A program made the position numbers and the translations under genes. Under the pieces are notes generated by a model. That model was not told the origin of the DNA and did no database searches. It saw nothing but the letters and a program-made list of their open reading frames with translations. DNA of 63,632 bases, counting the filler, from Sluysia triapertura (taxonomy: Eukaryota): the NCBI GenBank assembly GCA_046118255.1. It is 5 parts of 5 records of this genome, joined end to end, with 100 filler letters (N's around TTAATTAATTAA, not from the genome) between each part and the next. Parts side by side here need not be neighbours in the genome. Positions count along the whole stretch, not along the records: positions 51,369 to 63,632 come from JBJNIA010124523.1; 4 more parts are not named here. One strand, given 5' to 3'. Numbering within the stretch: the stretch's first letter is position 1; every line of letters starts with the position of its first letter. Below are positions 50,398 through 63,632 of the stretch, piece by piece.

Positions 50398-51935
50398 TTT
50401 TTGAGTTTATGATTAATATAAATGTACTTGATTGTTTTAATAGTATTATAAATTGTGTTGCGATAATGTTATACATCAACATAATTACTAGTTTTTAATG
50501 TTGGTTTATTATACTATACAATAATTAGTCAATTAATTGTACAAAAAAATACAAAATTAAAGTAAAAATGGCCAAAGGAATTATCTGAACTAAATATTAG
50601 AAAAAGAATAATTCTAATTTTAATTGAAAATGAGTAACATGCAAGTAAATGAAAATAATCGTACTTCTAAGCGCAACTTAGTTTGATGCGACAAAAGCCC
50701 AATATTTAAGTTATACCATTTAATCAATGACATGTAAGAATGAAAAATATTTGTATTCATGTTTATTGCATTTTAAAATAATTAAAAATAAAAATATTTT
50801 TAAAACTTTAGAAATTGATGTATTTGTAGTCAGTAGCACAGGAAAATTTCCTGTTTTTAAATTTAATATTTCTTAACATTTATAATTATACTTGTGGTAA
50901 TCTAACACTGCAATGATTATTAAAAAATTAATTTATTTTGTACGAATTTATAAAAACTGCAAAGTGCGCTGGAAACTCAACATTGCCTACTTAAACCATT
51001 TTTATGAAAAATCCTACTGTCTATGGGACGATTTTTTATTCATAAAAATTTTTATAAATGTTAAATATTTCGTCTATTTTGCCGATTAATTTAAATGTTA
51101 GATATATCTAATTTAATTCACTTTTTTTCACCTTTTTAATGTTATTAATAATTATAATGAGTTCTACGTAATATTTTTATCATTTATAAATTTTGTCTTA
51201 TTATTGCCGTAATCATCGATATTATTATTATTATTAAAAATAATTTCGTACAAAATAAACAATTATAANNNNNNNNNNNNNNNNNNNNNNNNNNNNNNNN
51301 NNNNNNNNNNNNTTAATTAATTAANNNNNNNNNNNNNNNNNNNNNNNNNNNNNNNNNNNNNNNNNNNNATGAAAAGTGCAATATATAACTTAGTATAATT
51401 TACTTTGAATATCATCCAATCATATTGCAGTCTTACATTCTATTATTTGGAAATAGATTTATTAATGTAATATAAAATTGATTTATTAGCTAATTATATT
51501 TATCATGTTTATAAACTACATTTTAAATTATTTTAACTGTAACAAAAACAAAATAATGACTCAAGAAATTTTATAGTGTTGCAAAATAAAACCTAATTTT
51601 TCTATAAATACTCAAAATTAAGTCTTTTCGAAATAAGGAAACACTTTGTGGTAGCTCACACCATAACTGACAATTTCAATATCGACAAGAACACAAAAAA
51701 GCTCAACTTCTTATCTCATACTTATAATACCTCGTGGTACAGTTAAGTATTAATTTATATAAAATCCGTGGTATTCTAAGTACTACCAGCACTCTACATT
51801 CAATTCATACTTTTCAAAATCTCCAATTAAATTCGAATAATCGCAGTCTTAACTCCACACTTGACAAAAGTAAAATGTTTAAAGTTAAATAAATTAAATT
51901 ACACAAACGAAGATCTAGTATTCTAAATTGCTTAA

Positions 51936-52012
51936 TACACAACTTATACACAACTTATACACAACTTATACACAACTTATACACAACTTATACACAACTT
52001 ATACACAACTTA
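51936..52012. repeat. 11-bp tandem repeat (TACACAACTTA) x7
   Basis: Perfect tandem units. Confidence 0.95.
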
Positions 52013-53380
52013 ATCTTTAATCTTTCTATGCAAAAATTACATTAAATAAAAATATAACAATAACTTTAAAATAATAATGATGATAGTAATAGTAATAATA
52101 AAAGCATTCAGTTAAACTTATAAATCGCTTTAATAATGTTTAACATTAAAGAGCTCGGAATAGCAAACTTTTACGTGATTTAATTATCATTTAGCATTAA
52201 TTATAGTAAGCGATATCAACTTTCTATTTAGCATAATATTTTCATTTCATCAATAAACTTTGAAAATGAATCAATATCTTCCAATAGTATGTAGCAAATC
52301 TCTAATTTCTGCCATTAGTGATAAATTAGATTTAATACTAAATCGGATATAAAGCGTTCCAGAAATAATCAAAAAATTCCATAATGATGATGACTTAAGC
52401 ACTTATATAAACCCTGTTTATAATTTAGTATTTTACGTAAAATACAATGAAAATTATGTATCCGTATATGAATTATAGTAAATTTAACAATGAGTTAGAA
52501 ACCTCTTTAAGGACATTCTTAGTTGTTAATAGAGTTAATGCGATTCAATATTTGAGTGGTTGTGGATTCGGCACCATTAGAATTTCAGTTTGTGATAGTT
52601 TGTGTAATAGTCATACGCAATTGTAGATTGTGAATATTGGCTGGAAATCAACAAATGTAGGAAGATCCAGATTTGCTTCTTAGTTCTATGGTATAAGAAG
52701 ATTTTGTCTGTGTCGTCTATCACTATTTCTAATCATCTTTCTGATACATATGCCAAAGACACTACTGATTTAGAAAATTTAAATACAATGACATGGCATG
52801 TTAATACATACTGTACATTTTATATTTATCGAAGTTCAATTTTACATTTAATTTGCATATTATAAATTCTAATATCTCTTATTATTTTTTCTTTCATTAA
52901 ACAGTAGATCTTGTCCTAATTAATGCGCAGTATAAATTTCAGTGCCTAATAAAATTTTATCATGAAATTTAAGTAAATAAAATAAAATAAAATAAGGTTA
53001 AAAGAAATTCTTGACTGCTGTACAAATTGGACATTGAGATTTCTCAGTTGTCAAATGACAATGCAGTCATAAAAATTGATAATATTGCAATAATACTCAT
53101 TTTTAATTTTTACAAAAGAAATAAAATAAAATAATGTTAAAAATTACTGAGATTATAATGTTGTATCAATTTAAAAATGAGATTACATATAGTTAATATA
53201 AATTCAAAGTTTAGTAACAAATAACAATCAAATTTAAATTGAAAATGTATAAATAATCATTTCAAAGTGAGATTTAATAAAGATAAAATGAAATTAAAAT
53301 TTTAATGAAAATAAGCAAGATTAAAAATATAAGGTATTAATATTGACAATTTCATAATCGAGAAATTAATAATAATAACT

Positions 53381-53431
<51 letters not shown>

Positions 53432-54922
53432 TAATTTATAATAATAATAATTTATAATAACTGCAAATAATTATTTAAATATCGAAATTATTATGCATTA
53501 ATGATTATTTATAGTAATAATACTGCTTTAGATTGATACATTAATTTAATACTATTTCGTTATATGATAGTAATAATACTAGTTTGAATTGTATTGATTA
53601 AATATTCTAATATTATTGTTATATGTCTACGATTAATTGAATTGACCATTAAAATACTATTGTAATTCTTACTATAATAAAAAACTATATATAAACGAGT
53701 AACAAGTCAACAATTCTCACACTCACACAAGGAAAAAGAATTTCAAGTTTGAGTTACAAAATAAATTCTTTGAACTGATAGTTATTGAAACTCAAAATTG
53801 TCGATATTTATCAAGTTGCCTATATCTAATTTTCAATTAACTGATACCTGATTGTTAAAAGAACTATATCATCGGAACCATTGATTTACTTTTGTATAAT
53901 TCCGAGTGTTTTTGTGAGGTAGTTTTTATTAGCTAGTAGTTTCGTTAACTAGTTTTTATTCTGCGAAAGGAAGGTGTTGAAAATAGAGCATAGGATTAGA
54001 ATTATATAAATATTATAAAGTCAAATTGAAATTAAAGAAATCCTTTTAAAGATTCTTAGAAAGTATATGGAAGAGTTTAAAATTTTCTTTTTTATAAAGC
54101 GAATCGAAATATTTAGTTTAGTAAAAATTAAGTTTTTTGTTGAATCATATTAGAGAACATACAGGAATTTAGATAACTAAACTTTAAACTGAGACGAGTA
54201 TTCCAGATAAGGTAAACATAATAGATAAAGTATATATTTTAAATGCAGAATAGAGGAAATTTGCATTAATAAAAGATTGTACCTTAGATAAATTTTAGTA
54301 ATATAACGTGAAAATATTATTAAAGAAGTTTAGATTGTTAGAGTTCATTCAAGCACACTCAAATTTTATAAAGAATTAACATCTATAATTAATTTTTACA
54401 ATATAATATGTATAACAATATTGGAAAAATATCATTCGATTGGTAACTGTTTAGGTAAATAGATAATCTAAGTCCTATTCATAACAAAAGCTCGTCCAGT
54501 TTTCATTTTTAATCAAGTTGTCAATTACTATTTCAACTTATTCCAAATATGTCGTGATAAGTATATATGCTCTTACTACAATGTTCACATTATGATTCCT
54601 AATAATTATTTCTTTCTCATTATTTATGACACACATAAGCTAGACTTTCATATGTTTGATCAAACCTACTCGGCTTAATTATAATTCATTTAACATAGTA
54701 AATTCAACATTCGAATACCACTGTCATACGAATTTTTATTTTTTAATTTTTAATTTTGCATGATCCACGGAACACTCTCGATGTCGCATTTCATTACATC
54801 AGTAAACATCTTAATATTCTTTTAATTTTCGGATATATTAATAATAATAATTTTTTTTAATTTTCAGAGCTTTTTATTATTAGTTCAAATTTGTAGATAT
54901 TAAAAAAATAATTTAATTTTTA

Positions 54923-54985
<63 letters not shown>

Positions 54986-55251
54986 TTACTATTATCTGGA
55001 TTTGACCTCGAGTTTTTATTAGGCAAAATATTCGATGCTTGATAATTATTTGCAATTGCATTATCGAGACTTATTTGAGCATCTGAAATAAATATAAATG
55101 TTACATAGGGTTTTATTTAGTTTTTTAGTTTGGATATTTGTTTTATTTTGTTATTGGAATTTTCCATTATAATAATGTAATTTTTATTACAAAATTATTA
55201 GGATTAATTACGAAATATGTCATTACGATTTAATAATTTGTACAAAATACA

Positions 55252-55306
<55 letters not shown>

Positions 55307-55495
55307 CGATCATGCAGAGTTTATGTTTCAAAAATATACAACCATCTACCAGATAATGTTAAATTACTGAAAGATTATGAGAAATTTAAAAAACAAATTT
55401 TATCTTTTTCAGAAATATTGCATTGAATAATATATTTAAGAGCTTTTGAAAACTTATTTTGAAGTAGTTATTGACGCAATGTAAGTTAGTGCATA

Positions 55496-55569
<74 letters not shown>

Positions 55570-55589
55570 ATAATTTACTACAATATAAC

Positions 55590-55761
55590 CTTCCAGAAAT
55601 TGAAGCAGCTAATGTATACATATTTTGTCCATAATAATAAAAAGAAAGCATTCCTCGAGCAAAAAGATCACCTCGATAAGAAGCGCTTCGCAGACATAGT
55701 AAAGCAGATTCCATATCAACGGGTCTACCAATACCAAAAAAATGTATCACACCCAAAGTAG
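55590..55761 (-). CDS. LRP2BP: LRP2-binding protein (Sel1-like repeat) exon
   Basis: tag|(A)TLGVIHFFGIGRPVDMESALLCLRSASYRGDLFARGMLSFYYYGQNMYTLAASISGR|gt resembles LRP2BP [44 protein letters not shown]. Neighbouring exons were not found. Confidence 0.75.
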
Positions 55762-56668
55762 CTATTTAATATAATAATAATCATAATATAATTATGTGGT
55801 ATCCGTGAAAAATACTTTATAAGGAATTTTCACGGCAATGAAAAATATATAATTAAAATATCCTAAAAATTAATCATAATCATAAGAATAGATTTTAGTT
55901 CCTAAATTTTTGTTAATTTCTTTGTTATATAATTGAAATGTCGAAAAAGAATGTAAAATTTTATTTGCACTTGCATCTCATAGATCAGAGATAAAGGCTG
56001 TTTATATTAAGTTTAAAGTTATTTAATATTAGTTAATGTATTGTGGACATTTCAACAACTGGAAGTTCAGAAGTTCTTGATTATAGAGAAAACCAAAATA
56101 ATTTTAAGAACTAAAAGTAAAGTTTATAACTGCCTAAAGTTTATAACTGCTTAAGTCATTAATAAAAAATAAGTTTAAAGGTATTTTAAATTTCATGTAA
56201 GTATCACAAGTCATTTCAATACAAATTAATTTAATAATTAATTAAATCCATACAAATATTATAACAAATATTATGACTACTAACATTGTTAACTAACTTT
56301 GACTATTGTTATTGTTTAATTTATAAATAATGTATTGTTATGACTAACAAATTTAAACTAAGTTATTTTTAAATTAGTATAATCAATAATATAATCGTTA
56401 TAATAAATAATAATTGTTATTTGTAAAACTTGTAACAATTTTATTGGAATTAATATATAGAATTTTAAAGTAAGATTATTATTTTAATTAATTTAATTTT
56501 AATTTACTTTAATTTTAATTTTTTTATTTTATGAGTCTCTAATTTGTCGCATCATCACTATTAATTTTTACTTTGTTTTATTTTATTATTTTTATTTAAT
56601 ATTTGAATGACCTCAAGGTCACTTCATTGAATATAAATAGTAAAGATACTTTGACAATACTCACACAA

Positions 56669-56780
56669 TTTTAAACACTACTTTGACACAATTCTTCAGA
56701 CGCTTTTATATTTTTAATTACCTACTTTTAAACACTACTTTAACACAATTCTTCAGACGCTTTTATATTTTTAATTACCT
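56669..56780. repeat. 57-bp direct tandem duplication
   Basis: TTTTAAACACTACTTT(G/A)ACACAATTCTTCAGACGCTTTTATATTTTTAATTACCT occurs twice. Confidence 0.9.
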
Positions 56781-57100
56781 GTGTTAATTTGACAAGCCGA
56801 AGATTGCAAGGAATTCTTCCGGAGCTATACATATTGCATCTATTCTTAGTTAGTTTTTTATTTATAAGTTGTTAGCAGTATTTCAAACTGCATCTCTAAA
56901 ATAGACTTAAAATCTATCTTTTCATGATAGCTGATTAAAATCTTAATTTAAAAATTATTAATTTTAAAAGATTATTCATTATAATAATCTTAGCCAAATT
57001 TCATATTTATTTATTATAAATATTCGTTGTATATTTTTACATTTTTTAATAAACATTGAGAAAGTTATTTTAATATGTTATTTCAAAATTACATAAAGAA

Positions 57101-57200
57101 AAGGTTCAGTGTAAGAACTTAATTAAAATATTCATAGTATTATTAAAGGTTCGGTTTAAGAACCTCAGTAAAATCATTTTTGGTTCAGAGTAAGAACCAC
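57101..57200. repeat. Three spaced hairpin motifs GGTTC-N4-TAAGAAC(C)
   Basis: AAGGTTCAGTGTAAGAACTT, AGGTTCGGTTTAAGAACCT and TGGTTCAGAGTAAGAACCA. Confidence 0.7.
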
Positions 57201-57304
57201 ATTAAAAATTAGTAAAAATCTTTAAAAATAAAAGCTTCTATTTTGAATATACTAAAGCTTGAGAAATTTTTAAGTGCCTCCAGTTACTTTAATTAAATTT
57301 GCAC

Positions 57305-57400
57305 ACAAAATCCAACGGTTAGGCCTAACAGGTAAGTCCAATACGTTGGTGAACTCACTTTAATTTTAACTTATTCTGCAAAACTTTTCTTACAGTATTA
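57305..57400 (-). repeat. Dispersed repeat, copy 2 (see 4462-4565)
   Basis: AAATCCAACGG...GGTAAGTCCAATACGTTGGTGAACTCAC is the reverse complement of the 4.5-kb copy. Confidence 0.75.
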
Positions 57401-58368
57401 ATAATGTATTAATGTTTTATGTGCGAGTTAAGTATATTTTAGGCATGAATATATGTATAAATTCATATATGTATAAAGGTAGTAACAAAATTATCGTGAA
57501 ACAGCACATTTAGTTTTGTTAACATGCGTATTTTTTCTTTTAAGAAATTAGGAAAGTTATTTTTGATAGAATAGTGATGTCTAAGTTTCTGAAGAATAAA
57601 TGATGAAAGTGTCATCCAAGTACATTAAATGTGGGTTAACTGAGGGACATTTAGTATTATTGAAATTATTTTCAATGTTGCAGTTATAATTGTTGGTAAT
57701 GTTTATTGTACTACAAATTATGTTAGATTTAATAGATATTACTATAAATTTTGGTATTTTATGCTATAAAGATTCCTTTTTGATTAATTGGATTAGTTGA
57801 ATGATTATTCATTGTTGGAAGGGGTTTAATTTTATATCGTGAAAATTCGTTAAAAGTAGAGATAACAATGAATAAATCAATTTATTACAAAAATTAAGTA
57901 ACAAAAATTTTAAAATTCATAATATTGAAATGTTTATAGCACTTTGGGAAGAACTATTATGGACTTAATGTCCTTAATGAAATACGATTTAAGGTCGATA
58001 AAAAATCACAACCCAACGAATATGATAAGCCTTTTTAAAAACCATAATAGAATCTAACAAAAATAAAATTCGGAACAAGAATTAATGTTAATTCTCGACT
58101 TGAATCTAAAACAGTATTATTCTAGATAATGAAGCATTAGAGAATCTTTAAAATATCTTCTACTTTAATTACTTTTACAGCTCTTATTAAAATTTTTTCT
58201 ACTAGCACGATATTATTAATATACTTACTACATTTAAATCTTTTACCAAACTTATTGTTTTTAGTAAATAATTAGAATTTACTAATAAATAATTAGTATT
58301 GAGTAAATAGTATTTACCGTTTTTGTAATTCGATCAAAATATTTTTACATCTATTCATTTTAATCTAG

Positions 58369-61300
58369 GCTGCAGGTGCAAGTCAAGGTTATGGGGTTTG
58401 GTTTAAATTTTTTATTCAAATTTCAACAATCTAGTTTTTTTGGATATTCATTTGATTTTGATTTTCATACATATTATATATGTAGTCTTTTATACATTAA
58501 TTAGTATTGGTAAATATATGGAATTGATATCACATAAATAATTCGAAAATGATTATTATCATTAAAATTTAAAATTGACTGTTTATAAAGTAAATTCTAA
58601 CCAGAGTTATTACTTTGGTAGGATAAAATATTGAATTGAATTTTATTCTGTAGACCTACTTTAGACTTTAGAATACCATAATATAATGAATAAAAATGTA
58701 AAGAAAATATATTTCACTAGTTTTACATTTTACTCTATTAAAAATTTTATTAATAGGAAGCAGAATCTTTCAACAATTGTGTCGAGAAATTATAATTCTT
58801 TAAACTTTTATTTTTTCTATATATTTTTTTCAAAACATTAGTGAAATTTTAATGCTTAATTTCGAACTTATCGCTTTCATAAATAATTAAAATAAATTCA
58901 TAAATTAAGATTATAAATTTTCTTTCAGGTGCCTTCAGCTAAGGTTAGTTTATTTTGTATTTAATTTAATACTATTTAAATTTAAAATTTATTTTCTACG
59001 TTTGGTTCTAATTTTGGATAAAAACATTTAAAAATTATTAAATAACCATTAACAATAATATAAATACAAAATCAGGAATTAACCATAATTTTCCATTGAA
59101 CATTTTGTTATTGAAGTTGAATATATTGTATATGATTTTATTTCCTAATTTCTTATTGTAAGAGTTTAAATTGTGTGCATGTATTGTGCAATCTGTTATG
59201 TTATAACTTTTTTAATTAGATTTTTAAAATTCGGAGTTAGATTTATTTTATGTTGAATATTTGCTGTTAATTCCGAGAGCGACAGTATAACTTATAAAAA
59301 CGATTAAACTATATCAACATTAAAGTGATATGGAAAACCATTTCAGAGTCAAATTTACATAAATAATTTTCCTAACTGGAATTTAGCACATTTACGTAAA
59401 TTGTTTTAATGTCTAATTTACTCAATATTTTAATTAAAATACTGTTTAGTAATAAATTTAGGTTTCGACTTATTTTAATAACGGATATTCTAAATTTATT
59501 ATACCTGGTGGACTTACTGTAGTATACATTAATTTTAGTCCAAATATTTTGTGTAAAAAATTCAACTTTAAAGGGCAGAAAAATGAAACATGAATACTAA
59601 GATAAAAATAATATCTAACGCTTTTATGATAGATGTTTTTTATATTTTCCTTTAATTAATCATGGATAATCCACTAAAATAGCAAAATACTCACTAAATA
59701 ATATTGTTAGACTTCGTAAAATGGATTGACCTGGATTCGAACCGGGGACCTCTCGCTGCGCTATTATAACAATTATAGTCCATTATATCAAATGACACTG
59801 TAGGCCTGTATCCCAATAAAATTGAATCTAATAGCAACATCTCTCTTGGCTTCTTTATGTTTACATATTTTATCACTAAAATATAATTTCTAATTGAAGT
59901 AAATTATTGAAATATTGGAATTTGTTGAAATTACGGATAATTTGATATTGTTTGGTCCAGGTAAACCGCAACTTGATTGAAATACAATGAATGTCGTTTG
60001 GAATTGATATTGAATTATGCGATATTGATTGTGATGGTTGATAAGTACTATTACATTTATCATCATTATTGCAATAGAAATTCATGGCTTTTGCACATAT
60101 TAATTAAAAACGTAATGACTTGTTGGAATGAAATTAATGTCTAGAACGTTAACTCGAATTACTCATAACATTGAAATGGTGTAGGTGGAAGATTGGCACA
60201 ATAGCAATAAAAACAGTCAATTCTGCATGTTTATTCATAAAGAAACTTGCATAAATATTGAATGCGTTTTGTCTATGGAAGATTAACAACTGATGTAACT
60301 GTTTGACAGAACCAAACTTATTTTGTCTGAACTAAAATTATTATAGACTGGAAAATTGATACAAATTTAAGTATATTTTAACCCTGTATGATATAAAGGA
60401 ATAACTTAATAAATATTAACTTACGATTTATCTTTTTTAAGAAATAGGGATAATTTGCGTTGCTTTTTATATTAAATTTTATGATTGTTACATCCAAGAA
60501 TATCTCATCATAAAAATTAATTCCGAAAATAAAAGGAAATGGGCAATAAATCCAAAATTGTAATTAAAAATAATTTTATAAAATAAAAATATAAATATTT
60601 CAATAATTAGTTTTCAAAAATGTAAGTAAAAATTATTTAAATAATTTAATTATTTAATAATTACTTTAGTAAATTATTTAAATAATTTAGTTTACAATAT
60701 TTTTATAAATTAATTTTAAATTACTTTACTTTAATTTACTTAAGCCATGATAAACTTTATTTAGGTCGTATTAGACCCCGACATATTTTTAATGCATGGC
60801 CTGGGNNNNNNNNNNNNNNNNNNNNNNNNNNNNNNNNNNNNNNNNNNNNNNNNNNNNNNNNNNNNNNNNNNNNNNNNNNNNNNNNNNNNNNNNNNNNNNN
60901 NNNNNNNNNNNNNNNNNNNNNNNNNNNNNNNNNNNNNNNNNNNNNNNNNNNNNNNNNNNNNNNNNNNNNNNNNNNNNNNNTTAGTATTATTATTAATATT
61001 AATATTAGTATTAGTTATTGATGGTTGTTGTGATGATGTTGAGTATGATTTTATCTGGTATTTATCAGCTGCAAATTTGAGATAGCAATTCTGATAGAAA
61101 AATATACGTGCTATTACTAGCCAGTCTTAAATCACTTGAGTGACAAGTTACACTTGCACTTCTTTTTCAAGTTTACTATATAAGCATTGTAAACCAATTG
61201 GCATTTGTTGATAATTCTTGGTTAAGCAGCTATAGTAAACTTACATTTCGTTTATATTGGCATTTTTCTATCGATTCGTTCATTTCGCATTCTGTTTTAG

Positions 61301-63028
61301 TTTGAATTGCTTTGTACCTAATAGATTTAATGAAGTATTTTTAACTTTCCGATTTAACTTGTTTGATATTATAACAAAATATTTTGAATCCATTTTACGA
61401 GTAAGACCTCTAGATTAAATTGTTGCTGTCTCGTTAGTAACAATACAATATCTGAGTACAAGATTACATTGTAACACATAAATACCTTCTGCAAATAATG
61501 TACAAATTATAACATTAACAAAGCCTTTTTTTAAAAATTCATTCCACATGTGACAACAAATGAATTAAATGACTGTGAAAATTATGTATTATTTGTAGTT
61601 CAACATTAATATTTCAATTACCAATTGCCAAATGAAGTCAATTTTTTATATTATCGTAATTTCTTTATTTCTTCTTTTATTTCTTTAGTTTCTGTATTAT
61701 CAAAGTTATCTTCATTTAAATGTTGGACACCTTCTAAATTTTCTATCCAATAAAATAACGCCATCCATTAATTTGTTATTTTGATTTAGCATTACTCGTA
61801 GTATTTCCAATCAGCAGTTTCATTTTTTTGTATTTTAAGCATTACAAAACTGTTTACAAAGAACTTTATTTAAAAGTTGACAATAAAATTTCAATGTGAA
61901 GAAGTTGTAATATATTATGTGCTGTAAATTGGGAATTTTAGAGATAAAAATTTATATAAACTGTTTCTTTAATTAAAGTTTTTGTAATGAGTTGGACCAC
62001 CACATTTTCATATTTTACTATAGCATAATATAAATACTGGTAATATTTATTTTCAGACAATATCGGTTAATTATTATTTAATTCAAATTATTTGTTCTTG
62101 TACAAATAATAAATAGTCGTGGTGAAATTAATTGTATAATTGTAATTTTAGACACAGCCATCTAAGGTAAATTTATGTTACAAAACCATTTATAATTGTC
62201 TAAGAAATTTGAAATAGGATCTGAATGAGTTTTCATAAGCATGCAATAATTTCTTTATATTTCTTAACTCATCCTCATTAAATAATTATTAATCAGATAA
62301 TTTACAGTGATTGACTATTGGCTTTTGTGCCATTCGAATCGTTAATGACATTCATTCTGAATGCACAATGTTGAATTATGTTTCTAACAATGGTTTGCTC
62401 TATTCTTTTCCTTTGCACAATTAATATTTGAAAGTAGTCAAAACAATTAGATAATTAATTTGTACAAAGTTTTCTACATATGGGATAATAATTTTTTTTG
62501 AAAATGTTGTATTTTATGTTATTTGTGTTAAAATTCTAAATTGTTCAACGTTGATTTACATTGGAAGCAACTGTTACTTGACGATAACTTATTTTTGCAG
62601 TATAATTTTTAATTTTCTTCTTTTAATTTTATTACTTTATAGGTTTTTTAATTTTACATTTAAGAGAAATATAATAAAATGAATGAATAATAATCTAAGG
62701 GAAATATACTTAATTACTTTTACAATTTGCTCTATTTAATACACATCCGTCTTGTTTTAAGAAAATAAAATTCTTTAAAGCAATTTTAAATTTCCTATAA
62801 ATATTTATGTCAAAATTTTAGTGAAATTTTAATGCTATAATTTTGGTACATAATAAAAATTTGATAAAAGCATTACATAAAATTCATTGTTTTATACATA
62901 ATATTGATTATAATATTTAATAATTACTTAAACTTCAGGCAGAATCACTTTTTGTTATTCAATCAAAATATTTTTATGTTGTCTTTTTTATTTTATTCTA
63001 GGCTGCAGGTGCAAGCCAAGGTTATGAG
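58369..63028 (+). CDS. Candidate micro-exon gene: 58369-58395 (AAGASQGYG), 58929-58943 (VPSAK), 62057-62065 (TIS), 62152-62166 (TQPSK), 62939-62953 (AESLF), 63002-63028 (AAGASQGYE)
   Basis: GC-richer islets, each bounded by (T-rich)YAG and GT, each a multiple of 3 and stop-free in phase 0. Two 27-nt copies are 25/27 identical while their flanks diverge. Confidence 0.5.
59722..59763 (-). pseudogene. 3' half of a tRNA (T-arm/B box); tRNA pseudogene or SINE head
   Basis: GCGAGAGGTCCCCGGTTCGAATCCAGGTCAATCCA followed by TTTT. No D-arm or A box upstream. Confidence 0.65.
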
Positions 63029-63632
63029 GTTACGTTTACTATTTTTTATTCAAATTTCATACAATCTGTTTTAATATTATCCTGATATTCGTTTATTTTA
63101 AACTTTATTTTCATAAATATTATAAATATGTTTATTTTATTGGTAAATATATTATTTAAGTAATTAATATCTGTGGTAGCTCAATTTTCATAAATACATT
63201 TCTAATTCAAACAAATAAAAACTGAATTAGCTGAATTAGCTGCCAAATCGTATTTTAGTGGAGCAAATTTATAATTTTGTTAATATGTATTTCGATTTTT
63301 AATTAGCAAGTAAATTTTATGCAATGTTGCTTAAAGTTTTTTTACTAGTTTATAAAGTGCATCAAATTGGCTGAAAATTTAGAATGCATGGAAAGGTTTA
63401 GAACTCATTTAAACAATTTAATAAAATTTTGATTTTCAATTAATTTATAGTGTTAATTCTGATCAAATCCAAATAAGTGCTACAAAAAATCAATACAACC
63501 TCTTAAAAAAATTTTCTGATAATTTAAAAGTTGTAATCGGTTATTGCAAGCCATTGTGATGTCGTATTAAAAATTCTAAAGTTAAATATATTTTGGATTT
63601 AGTCCTATTAACTTAAAATGTACTTTGTTTCA

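What the first reader, a model, noticed from the sequence alone, without database searches (positions are those of the whole stretch)
58369..63028. Candidate micro-exon gene built from symmetric 9-27 nt exons with a duplicated module
Seen: six islets on + with canonical splice flanks: ctag|GCTGCAGGTGCAAGTCAAGGTTATGGG|gt, ttcag|GTGCCTTCAGCTAAG|gttagt, ttcag|ACAATATCG|gttaat, ttag|ACACAGCCATCTAAG|gtaaat, ttcag|GCAGAATCACTTTTT|gttatt and ctag|GCTGCAGGTGCAAGCCAAGGTTATGAG|gt. All lengths are multiples of 3. The two 27-mers differ by one synonymous and one G/E change, while their homologous 44/48-nt upstream introns are more diverged, as expected under coding constraint. Known: strings of symmetric micro-exons define the schistosome micro-exon genes (MEGs), which diversify secreted proteins by exon skipping. 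Inference: this may be an independent MEG-like, modularly spliced gene in another small-intron animal, invisible to ORF callers.
Basis: partly seen in the sequence, partly recalled or inferred. Interest (0 to 1): 0.8.

Follow-up and report, generated by a model that had tools for sequence, protein, structure and literature searches.

The report
Unproven micro-exon candidates in local duplication
Six short splice-flanked islets really exist in this very AT-rich DNA and two of them lie in a genuine local duplication, but nothing shows they are spliced, and an ordinary intronic duplication plus chance explains them at least as well as a flatworm-type micro-exon gene.

Summary
The two 27-mers differ by one synonymous and one Gly/Glu change. 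They are the GC-rich centre of a larger duplication: block C (58312-58508 / 62941-63156) and block L (58636-58901 / 62622-62887, weakly 58034-58299). Three islets (63002, 58929, 58369) and a donor at 57331 are the best splice-like micro-exon candidates on either strand of the 12-kb piece (P about 0.003-0.02 against a Markov null). The other three are no better than the roughly 50 chance islets per strand. Islet 5 lies inside the duplicated flank, and its counterpart in copy A is 14 nt.

Evidence for coding constraint is weak. Flank windows are as conserved as the 27-mer (26/27), five of six donors have T at +3, and I found no start or signal-peptide exon.

The islets lie antisense and 5' of an LRP2BP exon whose best match is a tapeworm protein. 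Tapeworms and flukes already have known micro-exon genes.

Odds: non-coding duplication plus chance about 0.5; real micro-exon gene about 0.3.

The parts
58369..58395 (+). 27-mer, copy A (GC 0.56): candidate micro-exon, centre of duplicated block C
   Evidence: Splice score 6.8 (acceptor 3.9, donor 2.9; donor GTTTGG is weak).
63002..63028 (+). 27-mer, copy B, 25/27 identical to copy A
   Evidence: Splice score 9.5 (acceptor 7.4, donor 2.1; donor GTTACG is weak).
58929..58943 (+). 15-nt islet GTGCCTTCAGCTAAG, the best single micro-exon candidate (tttcag| ... AAG|gttagt)
   Evidence: Score 8.7. It lies 28 nt after block L of unit U2 and has no counterpart in U1 or U3.
62152..62166 (+). 15-nt islet ACACAGCCATCTAAG: good donor (AAG|gtaaat), poor pyrimidine tract
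   Evidence: Acceptor -2.8, donor 3.6. In-register similarity to islet 58929 with flanks is marginal, z 3.6.
62057..62065 (+). 9-nt islet ACAATATCG: at chance level
   Evidence: GC 0.33; acceptor 1.2, donor -1.3. 51 such islets lie on this strand.
62939..62953 (+). 15-nt islet GCAGAATCACTTTTT: inside the duplicated flank of copy B, very poor donor
   Evidence: Donor -7.5. It aligns to the 14-nt stretch 58311-58324 in copy A.
58312..58508 (+). Block C, copy A: duplicated segment that carries the 27-mer
   Evidence: (U1-U3 z 17; flanks without the 27-mer z 5.2 and 7.1).
62941..63156 (+). Block C, copy B
   Evidence: Same as for block C, copy A.
58636..58901 (+). Block L in unit U2 (AT-rich 'leader')
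   Evidence: 67% identical over 288 columns to 62622-62887, z 17. No 27-mer homologue follows it (z about 0).
62622..62887 (+). Block L in unit U3, directly upstream of block C copy B
58034..58299 (+). Weak, older copy of block L in unit U1
   Evidence: 62% identical to 58667-58914, z 3.8.
57284..57331 (+). Possible exon end with a consensus donor (AACAG|GTAAGT) on the same strand; contains no ATG
   Evidence: Donor 9.8 bits; sequence.
60806..60980 (.). Assembly gap between the two halves of the finding; continuity untested
55586..55760 (-). Context: exon of an LRP2-binding-protein (Sel1-repeat) gene. The finding lies on its 5' side, on the antisense strand.
   Evidence: Pfam Sel1 E 0.0055. 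52% identical to Hymenolepis diminuta LRP2BP aa 219-272. Intron at the same place, aa 218/219.

Best explanation
The most likely reading is a small, diverged, low-copy local duplication of non-coding AT-rich DNA. It lies antisense within, or just 5' of, a long-intron LRP2BP gene. Two blocks are duplicated: L (about 265 nt) and C (about 200 nt). They are arranged as three partial units in the same orientation within 5.1 kb. The GC-rich 27-mer is the least decayed part of block C, and its AG and GT flanks were simply copied along with it. The other islets are AG...GT coincidences of the kind this sequence yields about 50 times per strand per 12 kb, and one of them (58929) happens to look very good. 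Shown: the duplication, its extent, and the chance frequency of such islets. Inferred: that nothing is spliced.
For: Block homology is highly significant and extends well beyond the 27-mer, with z 17 for U1-U3 and for U2-U3 and z 5-7 for the flanks alone. Flank windows are as conserved as the 27-mer, at 26/27. Unit U2 has block L but no 27-mer.

Islet 5 is part of the duplicated flank, and its paralogue is 14 nt.

The piece holds 51 (+) and 41 (-) open 3n islets with AG/GT flanks. A Markov null gives 0.475 candidates per strand at score 6.8 or more and 0.125 at 8.7 or more, so each good islet on its own is within chance.

The 27-mer donors are weak and differ between the copies at +4 and +5, and five of six donors have T at +3. 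The one donor tied to a homology-supported exon reads GTAATA and the best donor in the piece reads GTAAGT.

No ATG or signal-peptide exon with a usable donor lies upstream on +. Only one LRP2BP exon is detectable in 12 kb, so the region is most simply a long intron or 5' flank.
Against: The three top-scoring micro-exon candidates of the whole piece, plus the best donor, all lie on the + strand within 5.7 kb. P(3 or more) is 0.003-0.018 under the Markov null, and the best minus-strand score is 5.4.

The 27-mer is 56% GC in 19-20% GC flanks. Both copies lack indels and keep length, frame and both splice dinucleotides. With gap columns counted, the 27-mer is better conserved than its flanks (p 0.012-0.022).

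Islets 58929 and 62152 align in register with their flanks (z 3.6).

No further copies of L or C occur in the piece, so nothing points to a high-copy transposon.
Confidence: 0.5

Rival explanations
1. This is a real micro-exon gene on the + strand, of the flatworm MEG kind. At least the two 27-nt exons and the 15-nt exon at 58929, and perhaps 62152, would be spliced in phase. The gene would have grown by tandem duplication of exon-plus-intron modules (L - 15 nt - short intron - 27 nt). It would encode a low-complexity peptide (AAGASQGYG / VPSAK / TQPSK ...). Its first and last exons would lie outside the piece, or a trans-spliced leader would supply the start.
For: The best splice-like micro-exon candidates of the piece cluster on one strand. 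The duplicated 27-mer keeps length, frame and AG/GT, with one synonymous and one replacement change and better conservation than its flanks overall. The exon sizes (15 and 27 nt) and intron sizes (44-3113 nt) fit published MEG architecture: 6-81 bp exons, mostly 15 bp, with introns of 0.1-5 kb. The neighbouring LRP2BP exon is closest to a tapeworm protein, and MEGs are catalogued in S. mansoni (109), E. multilocularis (35) and H. microstoma (52).
Against: There is no transcript evidence. No signal-peptide or start exon was found, and no terminal exon. Only 3-4 credible micro-exons exist, against the operational minimum of at least 7 exons with a run of at least 4 micro-exons. The 27-mer donors are weak and unconserved, and T at +3 is over-represented. 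The paralogue of islet 5 is frame-shifted, and flank windows are as conserved as the 27-mer. The H. diminuta neighbour of LRP2BP carries none of these motifs. There is also a look-elsewhere effect, because this region was picked by eye from many.
Confidence: 0.3
2. The conserved GC-rich 27-mer with its flanks is a functional or selfish non-coding element. It could be a piece of a low-copy mobile element, a regulatory site in the LRP2BP intron or 5' region, or an exon of a non-coding transcript. On this reading conservation is real but has nothing to do with a reading frame.
For: Conservation extends about 50 nt on both sides of the 27-mer at 85-95%. Blocks L and C occur in different combinations (L+C, L alone, weak L+C), as fragments of repeat families do. 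Frames 0 and +1 are both open, so the frame carries no information.
Against: No Rfam family matches. No terminal inverted repeats or further copies occur in the piece. The 27-mer is absent from the three collections that could be scanned, although none of those holds this kind of genome.
Confidence: 0.15
3. The units are diverged copies of a spliced-leader RNA gene repeat. Flatworm leaders end in ATG before a GT donor and sit in tandem units of about 0.6 kb (from my own knowledge, not tested here).
For: The U1-to-U2 spacing is about 633 nt. The 27-mer ends ...GGTTATG(G/A)G followed by GT.
Against: The ATG is not directly followed by GT. No Sm-site-like AATTTTGG follows in either copy. The copies are 66-85% identical rather than homogenised. 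No Rfam hit.
Confidence: 0.02

Closest known systems
Micro-exon genes (MEGs) of parasitic flatworms (Schistosoma mansoni, Echinococcus multilocularis, Hymenolepis microstoma)
   Same: The candidate exons are 9-27 nt and divisible by three, with 15 nt the commonest size, as in MEGs. The introns run from tens of nt to about 3 kb. There is internal duplication of exon-plus-intron modules. The candidates would be invisible to ORF callers.
   Different: No signal-peptide first exon, no last exon and no transcript were found. Only 3-4 credible micro-exons are present. The donors are atypical. The organism is unidentified and far more AT-rich (22% GC) than the H. diminuta locus (37%). There is no sequence relation to any known MEG, and none could be tested.
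Ordinary low-copy segmental or tandem duplication inside long AT-rich introns
   Same: The units are diverged (66-85%), share one orientation, are partial, and lie within about 5 kb. Indels are concentrated in AT-rich stretches. There is no ORF, and the position is antisense within or beside a long-intron gene.
   Different: The best-conserved, GC-rich core is exactly bracketed by a pyrimidine tract-AG and by GT, and is a multiple of three in both copies. A second strong splice-like 15-mer follows block L in U2.
Exon-intron module duplication in repetitive structural protein genes (for example the spider Flag silk gene; from my own knowledge)
   Same: Repeated modules in which intron sequence is co-duplicated with the exon. 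The encoded peptide would be low-complexity, rich in Gly, Ala, Ser, Gln and Tyr.
   Different: Those exons are hundreds of nt long and the modules are homogenised. Here the candidate exons are 15-27 nt and the modules are diverged.

Membership tests
Micro-exon gene (operational definition of Olson et al. 2020, PMC7653826) | Exons shorter than 70 nt and divisible by three | tested here: inconclusive
   All six islets meet the size rule. That they are exons at all is unverified, and three of them score at chance level.
Micro-exon gene (operational definition of Olson et al. 2020, PMC7653826) | [quoted passage not shown] | tested here: not met
   At most six candidates, of which 3-4 are credible, and no flanking normal exons were found. 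The piece ends at 63632 and holds a gap, so more exons could lie outside it.
Micro-exon gene (schistosome MEG description, bioRxiv 10.1101/2023.06.21.545858) | First exon encodes a signal peptide; the product is secreted | tested here: not met
   No ATG-initiated hydrophobic ORF with a usable donor lies upstream on the + strand. The only signal-like mini-ORF (61632, 18 aa) ends in a stop, has no donor that scored, and lies between islets 2 and 3.
Micro-exon gene | Spliced transcripts joining the micro-exons, with isoforms made by exon skipping | not testable with these tools
Micro-exon gene | Host lineage in which MEGs are known (Platyhelminthes, Neodermata) | tested here: inconclusive
   The neighbouring LRP2BP exon is 52% identical to H. 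diminuta, 41% to Fasciola hepatica and about 40% to vertebrates, over 54-59 residues. The intron position is shared with H. diminuta. No closer relative exists in the protein or metagenome collections.
   Flank stretches are as conserved as the 27-mer. However, only 2-3 local copies exist in the 12-kb piece and there are no terminal repeats. The genome-wide copy number cannot be obtained here (searches scanned unrelated collections).
Flatworm spliced-leader RNA gene repeat | Leader ending in ATG directly before a GT donor, followed by an Sm-binding site; homogenised tandem units | tested here: not met
   The sequence shows neither feature, the units are 66-85% identical, and there is no Rfam hit.

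The most novel reading that the evidence does not exclude
The islets are real, in-phase micro-exons of a MEG-type gene in an unsampled, extremely AT-rich (22% GC) animal that is probably a flatworm. The gene would be nested antisense in or beside LRP2BP and caught in the act of growing by duplication of exon-intron modules, with individual modules keeping different exons alive (27-mer in U1 and U3, 15-mer in U2).
Probability: 0.3. Interest if true: 0.5.

Novelty: already known. Interest (0 to 1): 0.3.

Why it matters
If the islets are real exons, this would add a micro-exon gene from a lineage with essentially no public data: one DNA run, and no close protein relatives. It would also give a clear picture of how such genes grow by module duplication. 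That would be useful but incremental, because micro-exon genes are already catalogued by the dozen in flukes and tapeworms.

If the islets are not exons, the case is a practical caution. In 22%-GC DNA about 50 open, 3n-long AG...GT islets occur per strand per 12 kb. Any locally duplicated GC-rich core can therefore look like a conserved micro-exon, and a claim of this kind needs transcript evidence.

Tried and rejected
- **Reads.** No letters of 60562-60598 were sent to any search tool afterwards. Local scripts either masked or skipped them or only read the window file as a whole for pattern counts.
- **Other genetic codes.** No long ORFs appear beyond what AT-richness alone produces.
- **RNA genes.** No tRNA and no Rfam family.
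- **Collection scans.** The metagenome scan for relatives of the LRP2BP exon found none. The 27-mer is absent from the metagenome, bacterial/archaeal and viral collections.
- **Word search with the 100-aa ORF.** No candidate.
- **Synteny.** In H. diminuta the gene upstream of and divergent from LRP2BP (139 aa, no Pfam) begins with a lysine-rich ORF. It has no AAGAS, GASQGY, VPSAK or TQPSK motif in any frame.
- **A fourth unit near 57275 (GTGCCTCCAGTTAC).** It matches islet 2 at 11 of 15 positions by my count, so it is not among matches with at most 3 mismatches, and its flanks do not align. Rejected.
- **An inverted copy at 53169-53768.** This is a compositional alignment through a microsatellite. 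Rejected.
- **Terminal inverted repeats around 57300 and 59540 (shared GTAAGTCCA).** Not significant, z -0.9. Rejected.
- **Further copies of L or C elsewhere in the piece.** None.
- **The bacterial promoter/terminator scan** is irrelevant to this eukaryotic DNA.
- **Not attempted.** The exon peptides are 3-9 residues, below every protein tool's minimum, so they were not searched singly. The joined model was not searched, by rule. Structure prediction, fold search and complex prediction were not used because there is no protein to fold.
Full report
**What is there.** The piece (51369-63632) is eukaryotic DNA of 16-28% GC. It has long (AAT)n and (ATT)n runs, no tRNA and no Rfam family. The only convincing coding stretch lies at about 55586-55760 on the minus strand.

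| Islet | Coordinates | Length |
|---|---|---|
| 1 | 58369-58395 | 27 nt |
| 2 | 58929-58943 | 15 nt |
| 3 | 62057-62065 | 9 nt |
| 4 | 62152-62166 | 15 nt |
| 5 | 62939-62953 | 15 nt |
| 6 | 63002-63028 | 27 nt |

The 27-mer occurs exactly twice, with none expected by chance. The two copies differ by AGT/AGC (synonymous) and GGG/GAG (Gly/Glu). Frames 0 and +1 are both open through all six islets, so openness carries little information.

**The gap and the reads.** The gap at 60806-60980 lies in the 3.1-kb interval between islets 2 and 3. No proposed exon touches it, and the "ORFs" that cross it are only runs of X.
- I tried to test continuity, and at the same time to look for reads, with the single read-laying run.
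- The look-up of sequencing runs had found one DNA run holding 85% of the words and no RNA run.
- Continuity across the gap and splicing are therefore both untested. Copy A and copy B sit on opposite sides of the gap, so "one gene, 4.6 kb apart" rests on the scaffold join.

**Anatomy of the duplication.** The two 27-mers are the centre of a larger homology. Block C (58312-58508 versus 62941-63156) aligns at about 72% overall and about 85% in its core.
- Against block-shuffled controls the U1-U3 alignment has z 17. The flanks alone, without the 27-mer, still give z 5.2 upstream and 7.1 downstream.
- A second block, L (58636-58901 versus 62622-62887), is 67% identical over 288 columns, z 17. It has a weaker, older copy at 58034-58299, z 3.8.
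- This gives three partial units in one orientation: U1 (weak L + C), U2 (L only, with nothing resembling the 27-mer after it, z about 0) and U3 (L + C).
- No other copy of L or C exists in the piece in either orientation.
- Islet 5 lies inside the upstream flank of block C in U3. Its counterpart in U1 (58311-58324) is also bounded by AG and GT but is 14 nt long, so the frame is not preserved.
- Islet 2 follows block L in U2 by 28 nt and has no homologue in U1 or U3. It aligns in register with islet 4 and its flanks only marginally, z 3.6.

**Is the 27-mer under coding constraint?** The evidence is weak.
- It is 25/27 identical against 72-73% for the rest of block C when gap columns are counted (Fisher one-sided p 0.012-0.022), and it carries no indel.
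- However, a 27-column window of pure flank about 12 nt downstream is 26/27 identical, the same as the best window over the 27-mer. By my count on the alignment, a 28-nt upstream stretch is 26/28.
- The presumed donors, GTTTGG and GTTACG, are weak and differ between the copies at +4 and +5.
- Across the whole model, five of six donors have T at +3.
- By contrast, homologues align through 55586, which puts the LRP2BP exon's donor downstream of that point, most plausibly at a GTAATA site. The best donor in the piece (57331) reads GTAAGT.

**Are the islets more than chance?**
- Islets of the form [CT]AG | 9-27 nt, 3n, open | GT occur 51 times on + and 41 times on - in the piece. With GC of at least 0.4 the counts are 8 (five independent) against 4.
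- I scored candidates with a generic splice log-odds model against the local background. The best on + are 63002 (9.5), the 57331 donor (9.2), 58929 (8.7) and 58369 (6.8). The best on - is 5.4.
- First-order Markov sequences give on average 0.475 candidates per strand at 6.8 or more and 0.125 at 8.7 or more. The probability of three or more is 0.018 and 0.003 respectively.
- The same-strand cluster is therefore nominally unusual, but each islet alone is within chance and the two 27-mers count as one event. The model was chosen after seeing the data, and the region was picked by eye from a very large scan.
- Islets 3, 4 and 5 score 1.2/-1.3, -2.8/3.6 and 3.3/-7.5 (acceptor/donor), which is unremarkable.

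**Context.**
- The minus-strand exon at about 55586-55760 is a Sel1 repeat (Pfam E 0.0055).
- In an exhaustive profile search, its single-stretch, ortholog-like matches that carry a name are LRP2-binding proteins. Hymenolepis diminuta is best at 52% (aa 219-272 of 374), then Fasciola hepatica at 41% and vertebrates and a cnidarian at 35-42%.
- The exon starts at the same intron position (aa 218/219) as in the H. diminuta gene.
- No other LRP2BP exon is detectable in the 12 kb. The flanking introns are therefore several kb long, and the finding, which lies on this exon's 5' side on the opposite strand, is most simply inside a long intron or the 5' flank.
- No close relative exists in the word-indexed protein collection or in metagenomes, so the organism is essentially unsampled. 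A flatworm affinity is a lead, not a result.
- In H. diminuta the gene lying divergent from LRP2BP (139 aa, no Pfam) shows none of the islet peptides.

**Looking for the rest of a gene.** No ATG-initiated hydrophobic ORF with a usable donor lies upstream on the + strand. The one signal-like mini-ORF (61632, 18 residues then a stop) is the kind of thing T-rich DNA yields on both strands, 5 on + and 7 on -. The possible exon end at 57331 contains no ATG.

**Comparison with what is known.**
- Micro-exon genes are not confined to schistosomes. Olson et al. 2020 report 109 in S. mansoni, 35 in E. multilocularis and 52 in H. microstoma. Their working definition is exons under 70 nt divisible by three, at least seven exons, at least half of them micro-exons, and a run of at least four (PMC7653826).
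- Schistosome MEGs have 10-20 exons of 6-81 bp, mostly 15 bp, introns of 0.1-5 kb, and a signal peptide (bioRxiv 10.1101/2023.06.21.545858).
- The candidate fits the exon and intron size ranges. Within the piece it fails the exon-number and signal-peptide criteria, and the transcript criterion cannot be tested.
- If it is real, it would be a new member of a known kind, not an independent invention in a "small-intron animal".

**Verdict.**
- About 0.5: an ordinary low-copy duplication of non-coding DNA whose GC-rich core happens to be splice-flanked, with further chance islets around it.
- About 0.3: a genuine micro-exon gene, with at least the 27-mers and the islet at 58929 spliced.
- About 0.15: a conserved non-coding or mobile element.
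- About 0.02: a spliced-leader-type repeat.

Interest is modest. The decisive experiment, cDNA from this species, is simple, and even a positive result would be incremental.

Noticed in passing
window 55586-55760 (-): Exon of an LRP2-binding-protein (Sel1-repeat) gene, 52% identical to Hymenolepis diminuta LRP2BP aa 219-272, with the same intron position at aa 218/219. It is the only exon of that gene detectable in the 12-kb piece. It is followed directly by an in-frame (AAT)23 run that is probably intronic.
   Followed up: yes
window 59723-59765 (-): A GC-rich fragment that looks like the 3' part of a tRNA (T-arm GGTTCGAATCC plus an acceptor-like tail), with no matching 5' half. Neither ARAGORN nor Rfam calls it. 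It may be a tRNA-derived SINE remnant or a pseudogene. It lies between islets 2 and 3 on the opposite strand.
   Followed up: partly
window 53367-53460, 54924-54985, 55253-55306, 55496-55565: Four perfect or near-perfect trinucleotide arrays (TAA/AAT/ATT, 18-31 copies) within 2.2 kb around the LRP2BP exon.
   Followed up: no
window 51935-52012 and 56669-56780: A perfect 11-nt tandem repeat (ATACACAACTT, 7 copies) and a 57-nt unit repeated twice at 98% identity. On the minus strand the latter is followed by an exon-like end with a good donor (ACACAG|GTAATT, near 56783).
   Followed up: no
window 61632-61688 (+): A mini-ORF, MKSIFYIIVISLFLLLFL then stop, that looks like a signal peptide but has no donor that scored in the scan. 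Comparable hydrophobic mini-ORFs occur 5 times on + and 7 times on -, so it is probably a by-product of T-rich DNA.
   Followed up: partly
Nothing was laid and the places were left out of all later searches.
   Followed up: no
L001 1543-4248 (-), Hymenolepis diminuta UYSG01000762.1: The gene divergent from LRP2BP in H. diminuta encodes 139 aa with no Pfam family. Its first ORF is lysine-rich rather than signal-like, and it shows no similarity to the islet peptides.
   Followed up: partly
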